The notes beneath the pieces are model-generated. The model saw nothing but the letters and a program-made list of their open reading frames with translations, ran no database searches and was not told the DNA's origin. A program made the translations under genes and the position numbers. Positions 42,028-56,500 of a DNA stretch of 64,000 nt are shown piece after piece. Every line of letters starts with the position of its first letter. Position 1 is the stretch's first letter. Source of the stretch: Utricularia gibba. Taxonomy: Eukaryota; Plantae; Magnoliophyta. Where the stretch lies: positions 1 through 64,000 of the forward strand of contig NEEC01000004.1 in assembly GCA_002189035.1 (NCBI GenBank). Direction: 5' to 3'.

Positions 42028-43991
42028 TCAAAAAAAATCCACTTGCACGAAATCACCACGCGACTGCGTCATCTCGGCGTGCTCCACTTCCTCTGTAAAT
42101 GCTGCCTTGTGTTCAGGTCCGGCTTCGCTCCTGTCGAAGGGATCCGGCACATCCGGTGGTGTGGTGCAGCGTATGAGTGCCCAGTTGTCGTTCTGGAAGA
42201 AAGGGTGCTGCTTTATCTCTGCAGCTCCACGCCTGTAACCCAGCCTATGCTGAGGTTCTTTCACCAGTAAGCCCCTGATCAGGTCTCTTGCGGCGAAGCT
42301 TACCGTGGGGGACTCTGGGAATCGCAGTGGCTGGCCGATGACGTTGAGTAGTGTAGCTCGATTTCCATTCCCACGGAAGGGTGTTAATCCGTACAAGAGC
42401 TCATAAAGAAAGATCCCGAAGGTCCACCAGTCAACAGCACTTCCATGGCCTTCTCCCTTGATGATTTCAGGGGCTAGATACTCATGAGTGCCAACAAAGG
42501 ACATGGATCGAGCATTTGTAGGCTCAGCTATCAGTTCAAGGAGCACGTTGGTTTCGTCTGAGATGTCCATCTTCAGTGGGGGGGCCTGTTTCTTCGGTTT
42601 GCTGAGAAAACGAGAGCTGAAACAAGTTGTCCGGATAACGCGTGATGGATCAACACAGAAGTTAACTGAGCTCTTGGATTCTAGTTTGTGATTTGAAGAC
42701 CGGACCATTGTTGGAATTGAAGCACACCGAAGGGAGAGATCGAAATCTGAAAGCATGATGTGCCCATCTTCTCTCACCAATACGTTTTCCGGTTTAAGAT
42801 CTCTGTAAATGATCCCTAGCATGTGCAGATATTCTAGAGCTAGGAGAACTTCAGCCAAATAGAACCTGGAATATGGAGATGATACAGTCGCACAACAATG
42901 AGCTTAATGATATGATTCCACGGTGAGGTCAAGAGTGTTCCACACATAAATCCCCACAAAAATACGGACGAAAGAGATATGCAATGAAAACGAGACACGC
43001 ATTTAAGGATTTCAGAAAGAATGACGGAGATTTTCCAAGAAACATGAATCTGGTAACGTCTAAATCATAAAGCCTGATATAAATGGCACCTTGGGCAGCA
43101 GCATTAAACAATCAAGCATGTCACGGCATCATTTCACACAAATCAGATGTGATGAGAGAATGTAGCGTATGACCTGGCTGCATGCTCAGGGAAGAACTTG
43201 CCCGGTTGTTTTTGTCTGAGTGAATGAAGGTCGCCACCAGGGCAAAACTCCATTACCAAGAAGGAGTAGTTGCGTGTCTCGAAATGGGTGTACAAGGTGG
43301 GGAGAAAGGGATGATCCAGTGATTGAAGAATCTCTCGTTCTGTCTGAGCTCTGAGAGTCTTCTTTCTTTCCATCAAAACGCATTTGTCCATAACTTTCAC
43401 AGCAAAGAGAGTTCTCGTGCCTATCAATTCTGCAAGATGAACAGTACCTATATCGCCACCACCCAATCTCTTGAAAATCCTGAAATTTTTCAACTCGAAA
43501 ACTCCATTATTCCGTGCTCCAACAGCTCGAATGGCCACCCACCTGGCATCATTTGCTTTATGCGGCTTGTTCATGGAGCTGAAACTGCCATAACTGCTTT
43601 CCTCACTGGCCTCGCTTTCACTACTATCTTCGTATACACTTGTCTTATGGCTTTCCACCAATTCAGAAGAATTTCTAGCGCCAAAAACACCAGTATGTTC
43701 ACTTGTTTCAGAGCTGCTGAAGCTCCGTTTGCTGTCCAAAAACTGTGCAACCGAGTAGAAGCTACCCTGCGGACTAGGACAGAAGCTAGATCCTGATTTA
43801 AATGGGAAAGAAGACACTGTTGAGAATCCCCTATAGCCATACGAATAATCCACTGGTCCATGAATGTACTTCTTACTCCTGGATGCCCCTGTATCCTGCT
43901 TCCCATTGTCTTCTTTATTTTCCAAATGGCTTCTCACTGAAAAAGTCTCTTGAATGCCATTGATTCTTCTATGATCCCTATCCTTATTCAT
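42028..43991 (-). CDS. AGCVIII Ser/Thr kinase (D6PK/AGC1-like), exons 43991-43174 and 42865-42028
   Basis: [41 protein letters not shown]-specific LSDFDLS with insertion, [17 protein letters not shown]-terminal DFF hydrophobic motif. Confidence 0.96.
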
Positions 43992-45107
43992 AGCCGGATT
44001 TGTAAGCAGATGGCGTGGCGGACGACGACTCGTTCTGACAGCCGGCGAAGAACTCTGCTCTATGCAAAAAGCACTACCGCTCGTCATCTTTAAGAAACTG
44101 CAGCCCTTGATCAGCTATTGTGATCCTGTTTCATCGCAAGACACGTGCGAAAAACCCACAGTAGAGCCGTAAAAACCAAGTTAAATCAGATTCCTGAATC
44201 AAGATTTTCAAATTTATAATCAGAAGGTAGAGAAAAGAATCATACAAGGCAATTCATGCATTTCTTGACATGCATCACATTCAAGACGTCCATCTCCATC
44301 AACAACGGACAACAAATACAGAAAAACAAAACCCCAAACAAAAGAAGAATCCAATGAATTACAAAGACGCGGACCTGTATCCAAGGGAAAGGAGAAGAAA
44401 GCTCGCCCAAAACCCAAATAAGTGTTCTACAGAACCTGCATGTAAAGGGAATCGGATCGGAAAGAAACCAACTTTGAATTTGATCGAACGGCGATACAAA
44501 CAGCACTGAGATCGTGCTGGAAGCAGTGACAAATCCCGGAAATATTCAGTTCTGGTAATCAGTGCATACTCTAGAGACAGACAGATGCATAGGTATTTGG
44601 AAAAAGAAGCAGAAAGCGGCGGAAAAGCGGTAACTCCCATTGCCGGTTAGAAAGCTGGAAAAATGGAAACGTGTGCATTGATTGCTTCATTCGCGAGTGA
44701 ATCAAAACGGAAGAAATTTATCTCTTCTTCAGTTTCCTAATCCTTTGGTAATATCCAGATAAAAGATAATCAACAATAATTAATCCCTACAAGACAAACA
44801 CCATTGCTAACAACTGCCGTACTAACACAAAAAACAAGCAGCAAAGCAAAAGAAAAAGGGAAAGAAATCACCATCTTCATCGTATTTGCTGCACCCGCAT
44901 CAATCCTCTGCACAATCAGACGGAAAACTTCGAAAAACTCAATCTTGATCGCTGGAAGAGTGAAGTTTATATTTTTAGCTTCCGAGCTACATTTCTTTTT
45001 TGGCGCCAGTCAAGTATTCAAAGTAGACTTATGCGCCCGGATACGCAAAATGAAGAAATCAGTGAAGGACTAACGGACTTGAGAAAGTACAGTGCATCTT
45101 GAAGCTA

Positions 45108-48100
45108 CTAGTATGTATGTTGAGGATTTATCCTCCTCCTCCTCCAGTGCTGCTTGTAATAAGGAGTATCATCTATAGTCTGCCTGATGTAGTCGATGAA
45201 AGGTGGTGGCGTTCGAGGAGACTGGTCCAGTACTGTTTCAGAGACGCTCTCACGTCGAGGTGTGACAGGTGAAGCAATGACAGGACTGCTGGAAGAAAAG
45301 GCTGGTTCTGATCTTTCTTGCCGATCCAAGTAGTATGCGCCCGCAGCCAATGGTACTATCAACAAAAACAGCATAACCAATACAATGGGCCATGAAATCG
45401 GACTTGCTGCTTCTGCTGCTATCACGTCCTGCTCCTCAGGGTTGTAGCTGACAGTGAACTCAACTCTCTGCCCGGTTGCAGGAAGCGAGAAGATGATCTG
45501 ATCGTTGAATCTCTCATTTCCAATTACGCTGACCTCATACTGCACAAACTTCTTTTCTGCAGAATGCCCCCTGTGGATAGGCCTTACAACAAGGTGAGTC
45601 TTGTTATTCCAGTTGATTTCTAACCCAGAATTACCAACTATGGTTACAAGTCGGTTGGCAGAGTCTCGGGAAAGATTGAAATGTAAAGAATCCATGTCCA
45701 AAATAGAAAAACCTCCAATAAAGAGGGCAGATGCTGAACCAATAATATCATGGTCCCCTTTGAGTGAAGCCTTAATAGAAACTGGAACCTGAGAATTGCT
45801 CCATCTATGTCCTAGATGCTCAGGCGAGTAAGGGAAGAACAAACAATACAGATCACCAGTTTTTTGATCCTTCGAAGGCTTAGCATACCCAAGATCATAT
45901 GGTTCAACTTGACAGTCGAGCAAAGAAGAATGAATGTGGCTTTGATGATCATTGTACTTTACAGTGAAGGTATACCCTTCTGCCGGAAATTTGACATTAG
46001 TGAGTAGTCCTCTTGGAGGATCAACAAGTAGAGTATTACCCTTCAACACGCTCACTGTAGTGTGAAGCTTTAACTTTGGACCCTCGAAGAATATACGCGT
46101 AGAACCTTCGCCTCGGGCTTCAGCTTTTCCAGAAAACATATTCACAAACACAGTACTCGCATTGGCACTGGACCAGTGGCCTGATACTGAATCACCTAAA
46201 CCTTCAATTCTGAAGTCAATGCTAGATCCTTGCCGGATAACTGGATTCTGTGGATATACATGAGGTCCACAAAAAATGACCACAAACACAGCCTTTTCAG
46301 GATTATTTTGAAATCCTACCCTGAGAAGTGCTATCCCTTGGCTTATTGCTCGGATGGTGATAATACTCTCACGAACATCATAGCCCTCAATGGATACTAC
46401 ATCAGGATAGTTGGTTTCCATCTCGAACAGGGTAAGATTACAAGCCTCATGGAAAGGATTTCCAAGGTTGTCATAATATCTAACTAGAAGACTTAGTTCG
46501 TTGCCAATGGCTAGTGAATAATAAGGAAAATCATCTGTCATAATCCTCAGTTGAGACACTTCAGCAACTCTCACGCAAGAAACGACCTCAGTTCTTCCAC
46601 TTGATCTATCCATTCCTTGAATACATGCAAGATTGTTAGGCCCCTTAGTTATAATTTTAGCTCCTTCAATCTGAATATGATCAGCCATTTGGTCTGCCTT
46701 ATTGGCACATTTTTCCAACAAAGAATAAGAAATACCCACGTCACCTTGAGAATCCACTTTTCTGTACGTGTCAGAAGATAATGGTAAAAGCCTCGATGAA
46801 GCGTAGTATGGTGGAAGGACCCAGGTAACAGATGATCCAAGAGCAAGGGGAAGATTCGGAACCACCAAAACTGATACAGATGCAGAGTAGGTCACTGATT
46901 TTGAGGATGAGTCAAAAAATATGTAATTGCAAGAAAAAGAAACTGTAATTTTAGTCCTTCCTGCTGACATTCCATGCACGACTTGAACAAAATTAAGGTC
47001 GCGCCCTTCAAAGGAACTAGTGCGGTTGACTGGTTCCTGAGGCATACCATTAGAATCATGTGCATGAACAAATTTCAAGATATCTTCATCCTCCACAGTC
47101 CACTTGTAACCACCGCACAGCTCATAGAATGAAAACAAATTTCCCTCTGATAGAGAAGCATATATTGGGATTGTTCGACTGACAGCAAGTTTTTCACTCT
47201 GAGAATGTAAACGTGCAGACAAGGGAATTCCCACAGTAATCTTGCCATAGGCTTTGCATAGCACGGCTTCATTATTATCATACACAGTTGCAACTACAGT
47301 GCTGTTTCCAGGCCACATGGCAGAAACTCTTCCTGAAACCTCATGGATTTTAACAGTCTCATCATTTCCACTGGCATATTTGACATGCGAATCAATTTTA
47401 GGACCCCCTTGCACTGTCAGGGAATAGGATGCACCTGGTACCAGGAATATATCACTTGGATGAAGTCTTGCAGGTGCATAAACTTCTACATTTATAGGCT
47501 GGCTCACTATTTGTTGTCCAGAATTTTGGATAGCAAAAAGATAGAGTGTTGTCACCCCAAGGCGTGCAGCCTTTAATGTGAAGTGCGGGGATTGTATATA
47601 TGAACCTTCAACAACTTCTGCTATAGGTTCTTCAAGTTGAACATGAATCTTCATGTAAGTGTACTGTGAAGGGTCAAAGGTACGGCCATCACCAACCCCA
47701 ACTAAAAACTTTATATTCCTAAAACATCCTACTTCAATACTTATGTGATTCCCTGTTGAGACCTTAATCCAGTCTATTTCAGCAACTTGAACTGTAGAAT
47801 GAGCAACAAGAGGAGGTACAAGCCCAACATCTCGAACTGTCACAAATGCAGTACCCAGGCCTTTTGGCACCAACAGTAGATGGAGATGATCGCAAGCTGA
47901 TTTCTGTTGTACTACATCCAACACATGGGAATGATTCACCAAAGTTTCCAAGAAGCAGCTTCCCCCAGTGACAGACATATTTAACATAGCTTCCGGGCTG
48001 AAAAACAATAAGCCAAAATCTGGGTTGACTCTGAGAGAAGAAACAAGCTGTAACTTGATAGAATCTGTTAGAGAATTGACATAGCCTCTGGTGCCCAAAA

Positions 48101-51025
48101 TTGAATCAAAATGTGATGAGGAATTCACGAAGCCATTGACATGAGACCTGACAGTACACACTCCAGACGCATTTTGCAAGATCAAAAATCTTTCCCAGGT
48201 GGAGCGAGAACTGGAGACAGAGGATTCGTCCCAAAATGCCAACCCTTCACATTCATTTAGTTCCCAAGTCAAACTGATAGAAGAAGCATTTGCAAAAGGT
48301 TTTCCAGAATCACTGATGGCAACAGCAGAAACCCGAATTCTACGTCCATTTGCAACATTGAATGGGGTGACACGTTCTCCTCCAAGCGTACGTTCAGCTT
48401 GCACAGCAGATTGTATGACAGAGGGAGCATTCAAAGCTTCATCTGCTATTATAACAACAGAAGATGGAAGCCTGCAGAAAACCTGCAGCATCACTTCTGA
48501 TATTGCCGGCAACATGTGGCCTTCACCCATTAAATTTCCACGCCTGAAAATAAGTTTGAAGGTTCCCAAATTTGCACAGCCTATTCTATATTGCTGCCCA
48601 TTCACAGTTGGCATTTGAAGGATCGAAATTCCCTCTCCTTTAGTAGAAATACTTTCACTTAAAAGGTCTACACTTTCAATGAATTCAATTTCCTTGCCCC
48701 ACCTTTTGGGTCCCCTATGAGGCATTACATCCATGTATGTACCAATAGCTAGATATAAGTAATCCAAAGTTCCCAATTGATTTTCTGATTCACATTTTTC
48801 CCAATCAAACCAATAACCACCAAACTGGTTTCCATCACTTGCCTGGTGCACAATAAGTGGCAGATATGCGGAAATACGAGAGGAGGCTTTTAACAAAATA
48901 GGAATTTGGTGATCAATAGTTAATGTTACATGCAATTGAGCCTGTCCGGAATTTGAAGCATATGCATATGTTCCTGAACAGGGGATACCATATGAATAAG
49001 GCTGAAAGTTTATACGTTCTAGATTATACTGAGAAAGTATTTCTGACGTTGTATTAACTATTCTAAAATGTTCACCCTCAACCCCCCACTTTATCCAAGA
49101 CATAAATGCGCTGCATGCATGGAAACCTACACCATCAGAAGTCTTCAATGTTACCATGGCTTGAAAATGTGACCCAACTGGTGCTTCAACAGGAAAGTTA
49201 GGGAGCATAACCACAGATGCAGGTATAGAAACCTCAACATCTATCTCATTATAATTCAGTGGATCATATATGGATACTGCCTTGACAGTCATCGTTCCAG
49301 GTCTTTTAACCTGAATAATTCCAGTTGCAGAAACAGAAGCGATAGCTATGTCTGAAGCTATCCATTTGTAGTCATCGGGGATATGGCACACCCTCCACTT
49401 ACTTTAAGCTCGAACTCTTGATAAACTCCGGGAATCCAAGGAAGACGGACTTTCTCTTCCTCCAAAATAAATTTAACTCGATCACAAACCATAACTTCGT
49501 GAACAACCTTAAGAACTCCTTTCCATGGATCATGGTCAGTGCTATAACCTAAAGTTGCTGTAAGCTTTCCCAATCCATAGGAGGTAGCCTTCAGGATTCT
49601 TGTATTCTTCTTTGAGGTACCATTACTTAAAGCAGGAAGAATGCTCCAAATAAGTTCATTATTACCAGTAAGCTCTATCTCATCAGCATCAGTCATATAT
49701 ATTTCTTGTCCTAAGCAGTAGACCTTGACTTGAATAAGATATACGCATCCAGCAATGGCATGCCACCGTGATATAGACGAGATAGTCTTCACTCCTTCTA
49801 TCTGATCACCACGAGGAGACAACGGCGTCAAAAATAACACCAAATTGTCAGGCAAGACAACATGTAGTGATGAGGCTTGCACATGCCCCATGACTCTGGT
49901 ATCTTCCACAACAACTGTTGTTTCCCCTAGTCCCACTGCACGAACGGTACCAACTGATTGGTCCACCAAGGCAACTGAAGAGTTCGAGACAGACCACTCA
50001 TGGGAAGGAGATGGTAAACTTACAACATAAGGCTTATTGGCACGAATCACATTGAGAGTATAGTCAAAAACAGCACCGATAAGGACATATATTGGTGATG
50101 GAGGATTCAAAGACATAGCTTCAGCAACTGTCAACACAATCTTGTCAGCCAATTTCTCATATGAATGCTCAAGCAAACTCACCGAAACAATCTCATGACC
50201 AATTTGAGTGCCTTTCACAACAAACAAATCCGAAAACACCCCACTTTCTTCAAGTTTAGCCTGTATATCGAAATCGCCACATAAGCCACCAAAATCACTC
50301 AACGGAGAGTCTTTTAGCGGCACATGGACAAGGCTATGTGGTGTTTCAGAGGCCTCCGGCATCAACTGCCACATAAATCTCACACCCACCAAAGAGGAAA
50401 AAATATTATCTGCATTATAGTCAGAGTATCAGGTAAATAATGTTGAAGGTTCCAAATTTCAATAATATCCTCACAACTCTTGGAACGAAATTACCCTCAT
50501 TATCGAAAGCACGGACGCGGAGTGTAGCCAGTCCATCGAGGTCAAGTTTAACCGAGTTGTGGAAAATCTGTATCCTGGATATCTTATCTATGTAAACCTT
50601 GCAACGAATCACCATCCCCGTGTTCAAATCCCTTGCATAAACAGCAGTCTCCCTCCGCCCCTCGTAAGCAGCAATCGACTTCAACCGAGCACTCGTCGAA
50701 CAAAGTTCAACTTCACTCGTATTATACTCCGGCACCACTGACAACACATCATGATGGTCCCAAGTCCTGCATAGCAACAACAACAACGACGACGAACATA
50801 AACCCACAACCCAAAACTAAAAGAAACCAAAACAAAACAAAAAAAACCGCACCACTTGAAGCAGCCGTCGCTACCCTGAAGTCTAAACTCAACGGGATGC
50901 GTCATTTTAGGAGGTAGGAGTATGTTGACGTCAGCGACATGGGGACCGGAACTGATAAACGAGTAAGCCGGCGGAAGTGGCAGAAGGAGAAGAAAAAACA
51001 GGAGTAACGGAGAGTAGAACAACAT
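45108..51025 (-). CDS. NUP210: Nuclear pore glycoprotein GP210/NUP210, about 1915 aa, only 3 exons (51025-50853, 50766-50495, 50409-45108); one apparent -1 frameshift at 49377-49380
   Basis: Signal peptide; GPHVADVNILLPPKMTHPVEFRLQGSDGCFKW|TWDHHD; Ig-like repeats; C-terminal TM WPIVLVMLFLLIVPLAAGAYYL; tail SPRTPPPFIDYIRQTIDDTPYY. Confidence 0.95.
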
Positions 51026-51169
51026 TGTTCTCTGAGCTTTCAGGTGAAAATCGAGCAGCATTAGAGAACCATTACGGAAACATGGCGGAATCGCAGAAGG
51101 AACCAGATGCCTTTTGTGTTGGAATAGAAAAGGAAATTGAATTTTCATCCAAAACCAAGTCGCACCTTT

Positions 51170-51480
51170 GAGCCTGGCCCAAACCCCTCTACTCTAAGCT
51201 GTCTCATAAGCCTCCATGATAGAAAGCCCAATATTAAAATATTATTTTTATTTTAAAAAGTAGAAGTATAAATACCTCAAGTCTAATCGAAAACCGTACT
51301 GCACTTGGGCCTGGAGGAAGGAGGCTACGGGCTCCGTGACAACATTAAGGAGAAAAGGGCCGGCTCAGGCCCATCAGAAATAAATAAGTATTTATTTATT
51401 ACAGAAAAAGTTAAAACAACAACATAGGATTCCTTTCCACCCCAGTCCAGATTTGGCCATTGGATTCGGCCACGACCCAT
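51170..51480. promoter_or_regulatory. Site II (TGGGCY/GGCCCA) cluster in the NUP210 promoter
   Basis: TGGCCCA near 51175, AGCCCAA near 51226, TGGGCC near 51306, GGCCCA near 51369. Confidence 0.5.
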
Positions 51481-53584: not shown

Positions 53585-56500
53585 CTACGATGGGGAGGGT
53601 GGAGAAGAAGGCTTGGGATCCTTTTCCTGTTCGGCTGAACATTCTGCTTGCGACGGCTCAGCCTCCGAGCCTTCAACCGCTGGTGCGTCCTCTCCGTTCG
53701 GCTGTGGGGTGGACGCTGGCTTTTCCGGTGATGAAGGATTTCCCGAGACAATAACTTCGTTAGCTGTCTTAGAAGGGGGAGTGATCCAAAGGAACTGTAG
53801 TTTGTGGCCTTTCCATGATTTCCCATGAAGGAATGCTTTCTCCGCGAAATGACGACTGGTAAATGATACTAGAGCCGAGACTCCGGAAGAGGTTTGAGCA
53901 TCGTTGGCCTCTTCAGGCTTTGAACCTTCGAGTTCCACTGATGAAAGCCCACCAGATGCGCCGAAGTGTTCCTCCAGGGCGGCAATCTGATGAAACAAAA
54001 GTTCACATTATCATGGAGCGCATTGAAACACAGTCAGTCAAGCACAGAAGTGGAAACACCCAGGCACTGCTACTATGAAAAAAAAAATATATATATATAT
54101 ATATATCCCACAGATGCTGGACTTCAAAGATACTTTCAGCAGCAACTAAGTCGTTGAATTACAGTATGGGGGCCAAAAGGACCACGAGGCACACAACTAT
54201 ATGGAGATGTAGAAGCAAATACAGGACTTTTCAATTGAGGAAACAATGAATGGGAACTCTAAAAAGCTATCTAACCTTCATGAGCTCAGCGGGCAATGGT
54301 GAAACAACCCGGAATGCAGTGGGACGATTGTCCAATTTGAATCTGTTAACTGCTGAGGGTGTCCCTTGAGATCCGAATGGGAGAGGCGGTGACAAAATGT
54401 GTTCCTGCCCTGGTACAGCTCGATGATTGGTAGACTTGGGTAGCACATCAGACGTCGCCTTGTCCACTGTCTCATTTTCTCTTGCAGGTGATCCTAATAT
54501 TTCAGCATTTACAGGATCTGTTGGTATTTCACCTTGAAAACTGATCTTCCGTTGATCCGAAATTGCCCCATTTTTAGGACATACTGCCTGAAAACATATG
54601 AAAAATTTAGGACGAAATGCAAGTAAACAACTCGAAACTCTAAACGATGGAACCTCTATCAACCTAGGTTGAAGCCACCAATTTCAAGACTAAAATCGTT
54701 CAGATAAGCAGGGATACCATCTTTGAGAAATCAATATTCAGTTAAATACTCTGATGCAATATTCTTATCTCAGAATTACACTAAACTGGTTAAATTCCTG
54801 ATACGGACACAAGCCATGGGATTCATTGGATAGTAAGAAATAACATCCTTAGAATCAGCCCAAACATGAATAAATAACACCAAAATGATAAAAAAAAAAA
54901 CCTGAGAATGACCTTTTTCTCAAGTCTGTCTAGTTGGAGCTTAAACTCATTTCGTTTCTGGTCTAGCATCTGCTGCTTTTTGCGGAGTTGTTCCTTCAAA
55001 AGCTCCAAACTTTCCATCTTCTTTTTCTGAAGGGCGGGAATTTTGGAAGCACTGGAAATCAAGGGCTTTTGATGATGATTCACTGGTGATTGAGCTACAA
55101 GGCCATGGGCACTACCCTCCTTACCACCTGGATTAGAAGGATTTTCCTTTCCCTTATCAGGACCAATAGGATGTGATGAGGAAGAATTAGCCATCATTCC
55201 ATAGGGAAATGCCACACTACTGACTCCTTGTTTTGCATCTGGAATATTATCACGATTCGCCCACCAAAGCTTGATAAACCGATTCCCCATCACGGCATCA
55301 GGGGATTTGAGTGCCATCTCTGCTTCTTCTCTTTTTGAAAATTGAACAAAAGCCCGTTCACTATTCATGGGAATATAAATGTCAATGACATCACCAAATT
55401 TCTGAAAGTGCAAAAGAAGTGCTTCTCTTTTGTTGTCTTTCAGGGGAATACCATTGACGAATAGTGTGCAGAGAGCCTTCTGAGATGGTTTTTGAATGCG
55501 AACAGAATCATTGCGCAGTTTATAAAATGGCAGACCGTTTCTATCCATATTAGACAACATTCCATGCTGCAGAGTATCAGCAAGACCCGAGTTCATTGCC
55601 TCCACGTCTTTGACATCCATTTTGAGAGAAGTAGATGATTTTCCAGCAAACTCTGCTTTTTTATTCATTTCTAAACTATTTTTTGTATTGTGAATTGTAT
55701 CCCTTGAAGATGAACTTTGAGATCCAGCAGCACGAGTGTTTCTAACTGAAGGCTCATGATCAAAGTCGGAATATGATACCTCAGTGTTTTTCTGACTTAA
55801 TACATCAGCATCTGCAAAGGAACCTGCTCCATCCACCTTTGATTTGTTGAGACCAAGGAGGGCTGTTGACGTTTCAGGATTGTCATTCGTCAACTGAGGT
55901 TGATCTGGATCATAAACGTCAGAAGCTCCAATAGCAACACCATTTGAATCATGACTGGCGACACCTGGCTTCTCAAGCTTTGCACTAAAAGTTTTATTGT
56001 TCAGTGATGAGCCTAAGGGGGTACTTGATCGAGGTAAGGCACCCTGTAAAGGTGATGTGACTATAGGTTGTGGTCGGGGGACAGAAACAGGGAGATTGAA
56101 TTGAGAGAGACTCTGCAAATGAAACAAGAGAGAGGGTAGGAGAGAGTTAAATAAAATCTAATACATTTAGCAGTAGAAAAATAAGTGAAACATAGCCATC
56201 CATTCTCAATAACATGAATAATTAACTAGCTAGGACTGATTGACACAGTGACAGGACCGCATCTATCTATCAACATGATGAGAAATGTCAGCAACTCAGT
56301 CATTGACCATAAAAGATTCATACCTTGACATATATCACAGTTCTGGAGATCGGAAGTGCAATAATTCAAAATCCAAAGAGAGCACAAAAAGGTCCAGCAG
56401 GGAAGCACACTAGCATCTCGATGCATTAAAAAAAGTAAAGAAATACTTGAAAAATAGCTTCTCACAGTCACAACAGCTGTAATAAAATGCATTCTACAGG

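What the first reader, a model, noticed from the sequence alone, without database searches (positions are those of the whole stretch)
45108..51025. NUP210/GP210 has lost almost all introns in place: two 5' introns then a single 5.3-kb exon
Seen: a complete CDS of about 1915 aa with only two introns (86 and 85 nt) in the first 0.6 kb, then 5302 nt uninterrupted to the stop. Neighbours (PGAP1, PP5, RGLG, OTU, DPH6, cystinosin) keep many introns. Recalled, not verified: plant GP210 genes have on the order of 40 exons. There is no poly(A) scar, a site II promoter is present, and the gene sits beside an SMR6-like gene as I recall for Arabidopsis, so this is not a dispersed retrocopy. Concerted 3'-biased loss is the signature of homologous recombination with a reverse-transcribed mRNA. 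A conversion tract over 5 kb removing dozens of introns would be an extreme case and a model for how this genome shrank.
Basis: partly seen in the sequence, partly recalled or inferred. Interest (0 to 1): 0.82.

Follow-up and report, generated by a model that had tools for sequence, protein, structure and literature searches.

The report
Ancient block intron loss in GP210
The nuclear-pore gene GP210 here really has two short 5' introns and then one 5.3-kb exon, but eight other core asterids (holly, carrot, cinchona, a wild potato, sesame and others) share exactly this structure, so the 33 introns were lost once in an old common ancestor and this says nothing about how this small genome shrank.

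Summary
The gene is real, on the minus strand (ATG 51025, stop 45108). It has introns of 86 and 85 nt, then one exon of 5302 nt. As written in the window that exon is not open: one base is missing in a homopolymer at 49377-49380, which puts a stop at codon 499. Contigs of two DNA runs and one RNA run all carry the extra base, so this is an assembly error and the true CDS is 5748 nt (1915 aa). RNA contigs confirm both introns.

Vitis and Actinidia GP210 each have 36 coding exons, with all 35 introns at the same aligned positions and phases. Nyssa is also intron-rich. The window keeps ancestral introns 1 and 2 and lacks introns 3-35, without gaps at 30 of 33 sites.

The same three-exon structure occurs in Genlisea, Sesamum, Erythranthe, Henckelia, Solanum, Cinchona, Daucus and Ilex. 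The loss therefore maps to the stem of lamiids plus campanulids.

The most likely mechanism is one in-place recombination with a 5'-incomplete cDNA. I found no paper describing the case. Interest is modest.

The parts
45108..51025 (-). GP210/NUP210 gene, from start codon to stop codon
   Evidence: Pfam NUP210/GP210 Ig-like domains. 56-60% identity over the full length to Lamiales GP210. Colinear alignment with 10 orthologues.
50853..51025 (-). Exon 1 (173 nt), including a hydrophobic N-terminal signal-like segment
   Evidence: The X5 RNA contig covers 50856-51060.
50767..50852 (-). Intron 1, 86 nt, GT..AG, phase 2. It is ancestral intron 1.
   Evidence: RNA contig gap and X4 loose end. Same aligned column and phase as intron 1 of Vitis and Actinidia.
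50495..50766 (-). Exon 2 (272 nt)
   Evidence: The X5 RNA contig piece covers 50495-50767.
50410..50494 (-). Intron 2, 85 nt, GT..AG, phase 1. It is ancestral intron 2.
   Evidence: Joint 'skips 85' in RNA runs X4 and X5, absent from DNA runs. Same column and phase as intron 2 of Vitis and Actinidia.
45108..50409 (-). Exon 3: 5302 nt in the window, 5303 nt in reads. It corresponds to ancestral exons 3-36 fused.
   Evidence: The sites of ancestral introns 3-35 project onto it, gap-free at 30 of 33 sites.
49376..49380 (-). Assembly error: one base is missing from the homopolymer (CCCC on the gene strand, five in reads), which shifts the frame
   Evidence: Frame change seen. 'Put in behind 49376: G' in X1, X6 and X5 at full depth. 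The corrected CDS is open.
45327..45398 (-). Single C-terminal transmembrane segment (residues 1820-1843), followed by a 72-residue tail
   Evidence: Strongest hydrophobic 19-mer in the protein. Sequence visible.
51176..51373 (-). Promoter-proximal cluster of four site-II-like motifs (TGGGCY/RGCCCA), starting 156-348 nt upstream of the ATG
   Evidence: 4 found, against 0.39 expected per 475 nt from the window-wide density. This is a motif match only; function was not tested.

Best explanation
This is the ordinary, expressed, single-locus GP210 nucleoporin gene of a Lentibulariaceae plant (sister to Genlisea aurea in the gene tree). Its odd structure is inherited, not recent. The ancestral eudicot gene had 36 coding exons. 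On the stem lineage of the core asterids (lamiids plus campanulids), after Cornales and Ericales had branched off, one event removed introns 3 to 35 together and precisely. Introns 1 and 2 stayed at their original positions and phases. The most likely mechanism (inferred) has three steps. A spliced GP210 mRNA was reverse-transcribed from its 3' end. The cDNA, or the recombination tract, stopped within or just after exon 3. Homologous recombination or gene conversion then replaced about 5.4 kb of coding sequence and all its introns at the resident locus. The structure then stayed frozen in every descendant sampled. In this small genome the only further change was that the two surviving introns are down to about 85 nt. 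The apparent frameshift in the window is an assembly error.
For: Shown. (1) Vitis and Actinidia each have 35 introns, all at the same aligned column and phase. Nyssa spans 98.7 kb with at least 28 exons at the same borders. (2) Window, Genlisea, Sesamum, Erythranthe, Henckelia, Solanum, Cinchona, Daucus and Ilex each have exactly two introns, phase 2 and phase 1, at the columns of ancestral introns 1 and 2. Each then has one continuous genomic ORF of 5.1-5.4 kb. (3) Loss is precise: 30 of 33 lost sites are gap-free in the window. The other three lie in stretches that are also gapped among the intron-rich genes. (4) In the gene tree, {Vitis, Theobroma, Actinidia, Nyssa} is split off with support 99, so the nine three-exon genes, plus the rows whose gene structure I did not check, lie on the other side and one change suffices. 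(5) The locus is kept. The RRM gene downstream of intron-rich Vitis GP210 matches the downstream flanks of intron-poor Sesamum and Ilex. Rosid annotations even fuse GP210 with that RRM gene (P0082, P0097, P0112). (6) The contig is not cDNA-derived: DNA contigs from two studies keep introns 1-2 and the flanks, while RNA contigs lack the introns. Inferred. If 33 of 35 introns were lost independently and at random, the two survivors would be the two 5'-most with probability 1/595. Concerted loss of adjacent introns with 3' bias is the stated prediction of the reverse-transcriptase model (PMC3652778).
Against: No direct trace of a cDNA intermediate can survive this long, so the mechanism rests on pattern alone. 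Retention of 5' introns could also reflect selection on them (for example expression-enhancing first introns) rather than cDNA truncation. Only nine core-asterid species were examined; Asterales, Dipsacales, Boraginales, Garryales and Icacinales were not. Recurrent loss of the same introns is documented in angiosperms (PMC4256211, PMC5716013), so parallel events are not impossible. With 3-kb flanks I found no microsynteny between the window itself and other Lamiales. I could not scan this genome for a second copy.
Confidence: 0.82

Rival explanations
1. One reading: the block loss happened in this lineage and is part of, or a model for, the shrinkage of this genome.
For: [quoted passage not shown]
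Against: The identical structure occurs in eight other genomes of normal size across lamiids and campanulids. The Genlisea aurea genome paper concludes that contraction was not due to intron loss. Only intron length differs here.
Confidence: 0.02
2. Parallel block losses: several asterid lineages independently lost introns 3-35 by separate cDNA recombination events.
For: Recurrent and parallel intron loss is documented in angiosperms (PMC4256211; PMC5716013). A highly expressed long gene could be hit repeatedly.
Against: All nine genes share the same 5' boundary, right after intron 2, and none keeps any of the 33 downstream introns. Independent events should stop at different places. One change on the tree suffices.
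Confidence: 0.06
3. Stepwise genomic deletion: the 33 introns were removed one by one, by microhomology-mediated or end-joining deletions, along the stem branch.
For: Genomic deletion and double-strand-break repair are accepted alternative routes of precise intron loss and were favoured for ABCB1 (PMC5716013).
Against: This needs 33 separate precise deletions confined to one branch, sparing exactly the two 5'-most introns (1/595 by chance). It also needs no further loss in nine descendant lineages, and none in Vitis and Actinidia, which keep identical sets of 35.
Confidence: 0.04
4. Retrogene chimera: a 5'-truncated retrocopy landed in or beside the parent gene (for example in intron 2) and took over, with the old exons 3-36 deleted afterwards.
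For: It gives the same final structure, and 5' truncation is typical of retrocopies.
Against: Exon 3 starts at exactly the ancestral acceptor with the same phase. That outcome is expected from homologous recombination but would be a coincidence for an insertion. It also needs an extra large deletion. No poly(A) remnant is seen, though after this much time none would be expected.
Confidence: 0.05
5. Artefact: the contig was built from cDNA-like reads or contaminated by transcript sequence.
For: The window does contain one assembly error in this gene.
Against: Contigs of DNA runs from two studies span the gene with its flanks and retain introns 1-2. RNA contigs differ from them exactly by those introns. 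Eight independent assemblies of other species show the same long exon.
Confidence: 0.01

Closest known systems
Reverse-transcriptase (mRNA-mediated) model of intron loss, as tested by Zhu and Niu 2013 (PMC3652778)
   Same: Precise loss, simultaneous loss of adjacent introns, a strong 3' bias with the 5'-most introns surviving, and the gene remaining at its own locus.
   Different: The scale is unusual for one gene in a plant: 33 consecutive introns and a coding tract of about 5.4 kb in what looks like one event. The paper's mammalian cases involve a few adjacent introns. The mechanism is inferred from pattern, not shown.
Parallel loss of introns in ABCB1 across angiosperms (PMC5716013)
   Same: A conserved plant gene whose intron complement differs sharply between lineages, with precise removal.
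   Different: ABCB1 lost introns singly and repeatedly in many lineages, mostly grasses, and end-joining repair was favoured. GP210 shows one contiguous block with one boundary, then complete stasis.
Processed retrogenes (dispersed retrocopies)
   Same: Most of the coding sequence is intron-free and presumably derives from a spliced transcript.
   Different: Two ancestral introns, the promoter side and the neighbourhood are retained. There is no poly(A) tract and no new locus. A defining feature (absence of all parental introns) is not met.
Canonical GP210/NUP210 genes (Vitis, Actinidia: 36 coding exons)
   Same: Orthologous protein with the same domain order, signal-like N-terminus, single C-terminal membrane span and short tail.
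   Different: Only the gene structure differs: 3 exons instead of 36, and 5.9 kb instead of 32-99 kb.

Membership tests
GP210/NUP210 nuclear pore membrane glycoprotein | Array of NUP210-type Ig-like domains along the whole luminal part | tested here: met
   Pfam Ig_NUP210_2nd, 3rd, 7th and 15th, Ig_GP210_15th and 16th, and Big_2, all above the curated cut-offs apart from one marginal Big_2 match on the N-terminal piece.
GP210/NUP210 nuclear pore membrane glycoprotein | Full-length colinear orthology with named plant GP210 proteins | tested here: met
   E = 0 and 100% query cover against about 120 plant GP210 proteins. 51-63% identity over the whole alignment. Sister to Genlisea aurea GP210 in the tree.
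GP210/NUP210 nuclear pore membrane glycoprotein | N-terminal signal sequence, one transmembrane segment near the C-terminus, short cytoplasmic tail | tested here: met
   Hydrophobic residues 1-22. The strongest hydrophobic segment is at residues 1820-1843 of 1915. This is a hydropathy scan only; no dedicated predictor was used.
GP210/NUP210 nuclear pore membrane glycoprotein | Intact and expressed gene | tested here: met
   The frame is open once the read-supported base is included. A 6020-nt spliced contig from a run labelled RNA covers the whole CDS. Localisation at the pore was not tested.
cDNA-mediated (reverse-transcriptase model) intron loss | Precise excision at ancestral intron sites | tested here: met
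   30 of 33 sites are gap-free. The remaining 3 lie in regions that are variable in all taxa.
cDNA-mediated (reverse-transcriptase model) intron loss | Adjacent introns lost together, with 3' bias | tested here: met
   Introns 3-35 are all absent and introns 1-2 are kept, in nine species. The chance of that pair surviving is 1/595 under independent loss.
cDNA-mediated (reverse-transcriptase model) intron loss | Gene stays at the parental locus | tested here: met
   Retained introns 1-2 at homologous positions. The downstream RRM neighbour is shared by Vitis, Sesamum and Ilex. For the window's own flanks the test was inconclusive.
cDNA-mediated (reverse-transcriptase model) intron loss | Germline expression of the gene and an actual cDNA intermediate | not testable with these tools
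   The event is ancient and no trace is expected.
Processed retrogene | All parental introns absent, poly(A) remnant, new genomic location | tested here: not met
   Two parental introns are kept. No A-rich tract follows the stop. The ancestral neighbour is kept in Ilex and Sesamum.

The most novel reading that the evidence does not exclude
GP210 underwent a single in-place conversion, templated by a cDNA of at least 5.4 kb, that deleted 33 consecutive introns on the stem of lamiids plus campanulids. It has been frozen since. That would make it an unreported rare genomic change that cleanly marks the core asterids, and one of the largest single-gene block intron losses documented in plants.
Probability: 0.45. 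Interest if true: 0.5.

Novelty: new member of a known kind. Interest (0 to 1): 0.33.

Why it matters
For this genome it matters mainly as a correction: the striking structure is inherited and cannot be used as evidence of recent, genome-shrinking intron loss. More generally, comparing a small asterid genome with a distant reference such as Arabidopsis or grape will count old shared losses like this one (33 introns in one gene) as 'net intron loss' of the small genome. Other block-loss candidates noted in this genome therefore need outgroup checks. The event itself is a clean, large example of 3'-biased concerted intron loss, with the ancestral state (36 exons), the derived state (3 exons) and the branch all defined. 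It could serve as a phylogenetic marker for core asterids and as a natural test of what the two retained 5' introns do. The 1-nt assembly error is also practical: any annotation of this assembly will truncate or split the gene.

Tried and rejected
1. Reading exon 3 as one ORF fails in the window. I considered a real frameshift or pseudogene and a micro-intron. Both were rejected because DNA and RNA contigs carry the missing base.
2. Plain tblastn exon mapping missed small exons in Vitis and Actinidia. An exact k-mer spliced mapper replaced it. That mapper lost track in the last part of Nyssa, and tblastn did not recover it fully, so only the first 28 Nyssa exons are claimed.
3. The Genlisea aurea annotation shows a fourth exon. 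The 174-nt 'intron' is in frame, open and homologous to coding sequence here, so I rejected it as an annotation artefact.
4. The small ORFs between the gene and the downstream kinase look non-coding, and a motif scan found nothing.
5. Microsynteny of the window's flanks with Vitis, Sesamum, Erythranthe and Henckelia 3-kb flanks gave no tblastx hits. The downstream kinase here resembles the Erythranthe arrangement, but the locus held only 24 nt of that gene.
6. The look-up for Olea (P0023) found no record.
7. Literature searches for GP210 with intron loss, for asterids or lamiids with intron loss, and for adjacent-intron loss in Solanum found no description of this case.
8. Earlier notes of the scan hold nothing on GP210.
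Full report
WHAT IS IN THE WINDOW. The gene is on the minus strand. Six-frame inspection and the sequence itself give this structure:
- ATG at 51025
- exon 1: 50853-51025
- intron 1: 50767-50852 (86 nt, GT..AG)
- exon 2: 50495-50766
- intron 2: 50410-50494 (85 nt, GT..AG)
- exon 3: 45108-50409

The pieces carry NUP210/GP210 Ig-like domains. They match about 120 plant GP210 proteins end to end at 45-60% identity, with Lamiales best. A hydrophobic N-terminus, one strong membrane segment at residues 1820-1843 and a short tail complete the family picture.

Exon 3 is not one open frame in the window. The frame changes between '...GGCAIS' and 'PDDYKW...' at a run of four C on the gene strand (49377-49380). 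The literal CDS stops at codon 499. I laid contigs of four public runs on 45108-51060. All three runs that cover the site have one extra G behind 49376 at full depth:
- X1: DNA, 2013, possibly the source sample, otherwise identical to the window
- X6: DNA, 2019, another study, 28 other differences
- X5: RNA, 2017

With that base the CDS is 5748 nt, or 1915 aa, without an internal stop. So the gene is intact and the window has a homopolymer assembly error.

The same call shows splicing. X5's 6020-nt contig and X4 skip 50410-50494. X5 jumps from 50767 to 50856, and X4's loose end at 50767 reads into exon 1. DNA contigs keep both introns and run into the flanks. The contig is therefore not cDNA-derived.

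THE ANCESTRAL STATE. I fetched the genomic loci of annotated orthologues and mapped each protein exactly onto its DNA.
- Vitis vinifera (70.8 kb) and Actinidia chinensis (32.4 kb) each have 36 coding exons. All 35 introns fall in the same alignment column with the same phase.
- Nyssa sinensis (Cornales) spans 98.7 kb. At least its first 28 exons have the same borders. My mapper failed in its last part.

THE DERIVED STATE AND ITS DISTRIBUTION. The window's two introns are phase 2 and phase 1. They sit in the columns of ancestral introns 1 and 2. The sites of introns 3-35 project onto exon 3 with no gap at 30 of 33 sites, and the other three lie in stretches that vary in all taxa.

The decisive result is that the same structure is found in every core asterid I could fetch. 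Intron lengths are in nt.

| Species | Order | Intron 1 | Intron 2 | Exon 3 |
|---|---|---|---|---|
| Sesamum alatum | Lamiales | 113 | 994 | 5406 |
| Erythranthe guttata | Lamiales | 126 | 107 | 5112 |
| Henckelia pumila | Lamiales | 132 | 514 | 5418 |
| Solanum pinnatisectum | Solanales | 844 | 1106 | 5409 |
| Cinchona calisaya | Gentianales | 692 | 91 | 5433 |
| Daucus carota | Apiales | 292 | 1840 | 5409 |
| Ilex paraguariensis | Aquifoliales | 1189 | 2154 | 5439 |

Genlisea aurea fits too. Its annotated extra 174-nt intron is open, in frame and homologous to coding sequence, so it is an annotation artefact.

In a maximum-likelihood tree the window is sister to Genlisea aurea (support 100), on long branches inside the higher core Lamiales. 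{Vitis, Theobroma, Actinidia, Nyssa} is separated from everything else with support 99. One change on the stem of lamiids plus campanulids explains all the data. From general knowledge, not computed here, that stem is on the order of 100 million years old.

IN PLACE OR RETROGENE. Two ancestral introns survive with unchanged phase, and exon 3 begins at the ancestral acceptor. The RRM-protein gene that follows GP210 in intron-rich Vitis also follows it in intron-poor Sesamum and Ilex, and the flanks match by tblastx. Several rosid annotations even fuse the two genes. This is the same locus.

For the window itself I could not show microsynteny with 3-kb flanks. Its downstream neighbour is a protein kinase, as in Erythranthe. 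I could not confirm the SMR6-like neighbour. Four site-II-like motifs lie upstream and there is no A-rich scar.

MECHANISM. The pattern is shown: precise, contiguous, 3'-biased loss, at the resident locus, on one branch. The process is inferred: recombination of the gene with a 5'-incomplete cDNA of its spliced mRNA. This is the reverse-transcriptase model, whose predictions are exactly these (PMC3652778). Under independent random loss the two survivors would be the two 5'-most introns with probability 1/595. The rivals need extra coincidences and are scored low: parallel block losses, 33 separate genomic deletions, or a retrocopy that replaced its parent. Parallel intron loss is documented in plants (PMC5716013; PMC4256211), so denser sampling is the proper test.

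The mechanistic reading is reasonable. The lineage-specific contribution is only intron shortening: 86 and 85 nt here and about 98 and 66 nt in Genlisea, against hundreds to thousands of nt elsewhere. This agrees with the published conclusion for Genlisea aurea that contraction involved shorter introns 'but not intron loss' (PMC3728226). [quoted passage not shown]

NOVELTY. Four literature searches found no description of this GP210 event, and the scan's own notes hold nothing on it. It is a new, unusually large and well-bounded example of a known kind of change. It is visible in any asterid annotation. It is not a new mechanism.

Noticed in passing
window 49376-49380: One-base homopolymer deletion in the assembly relative to contigs of three public runs. 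It breaks the GP210 frame. The window's own protein did not appear among database hits (best hit 60% identity), which suggests the reference annotation lacks a full-length model.
   Followed up: yes
L001:5141-5314 (Genlisea aurea KE531772.1): The deposited model M569_10806 has a 174-nt 'intron' that is in frame, open and 54% identical in translation to the window's GP210 residues about 1529-1620. It is probably coding sequence annotated as an intron.
   Followed up: yes
window 49795 and 39 single-base sites across 45233-51002: Runs X5 and X6 of the same species label differ from the window by about 21-28 substitutions. X5 also has an in-frame 3-nt deletion at 49795. This points to accession-level polymorphism in GP210.
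   Followed up: no
window 42031-44087, minus strand: A protein kinase gene in at least two exons lies directly downstream of GP210 on the same strand (Pfam Pkinase). Erythranthe has the same order, GP210 then a kinase. Orthology was not tested.
   Followed up: partly
window 54826-56127, minus strand: A 434-aa ORF with a weak RRM_1 / Nup35-type RRM match lies upstream of GP210. It gave no tblastx match to the start of the RRM gene that lies downstream of GP210 in Vitis, of which only about 1.4 kb was held.
   Followed up: partly
gene tree: The Lentibulariaceae GP210 pair sits on long branches (stem 0.24, tips 0.41 and 0.43, against a median tip of 0.18). This indicates faster protein evolution in this family.
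   Followed up: no
P0082, P0097, P0112 (Cephalotus, Fragaria, Arachis): Database models of about 2300 aa fuse GP210 with the neighbouring RRM protein. These are probably read-through annotation errors, and they incidentally document the conserved GP210-RRM adjacency in rosids.
   Followed up: no
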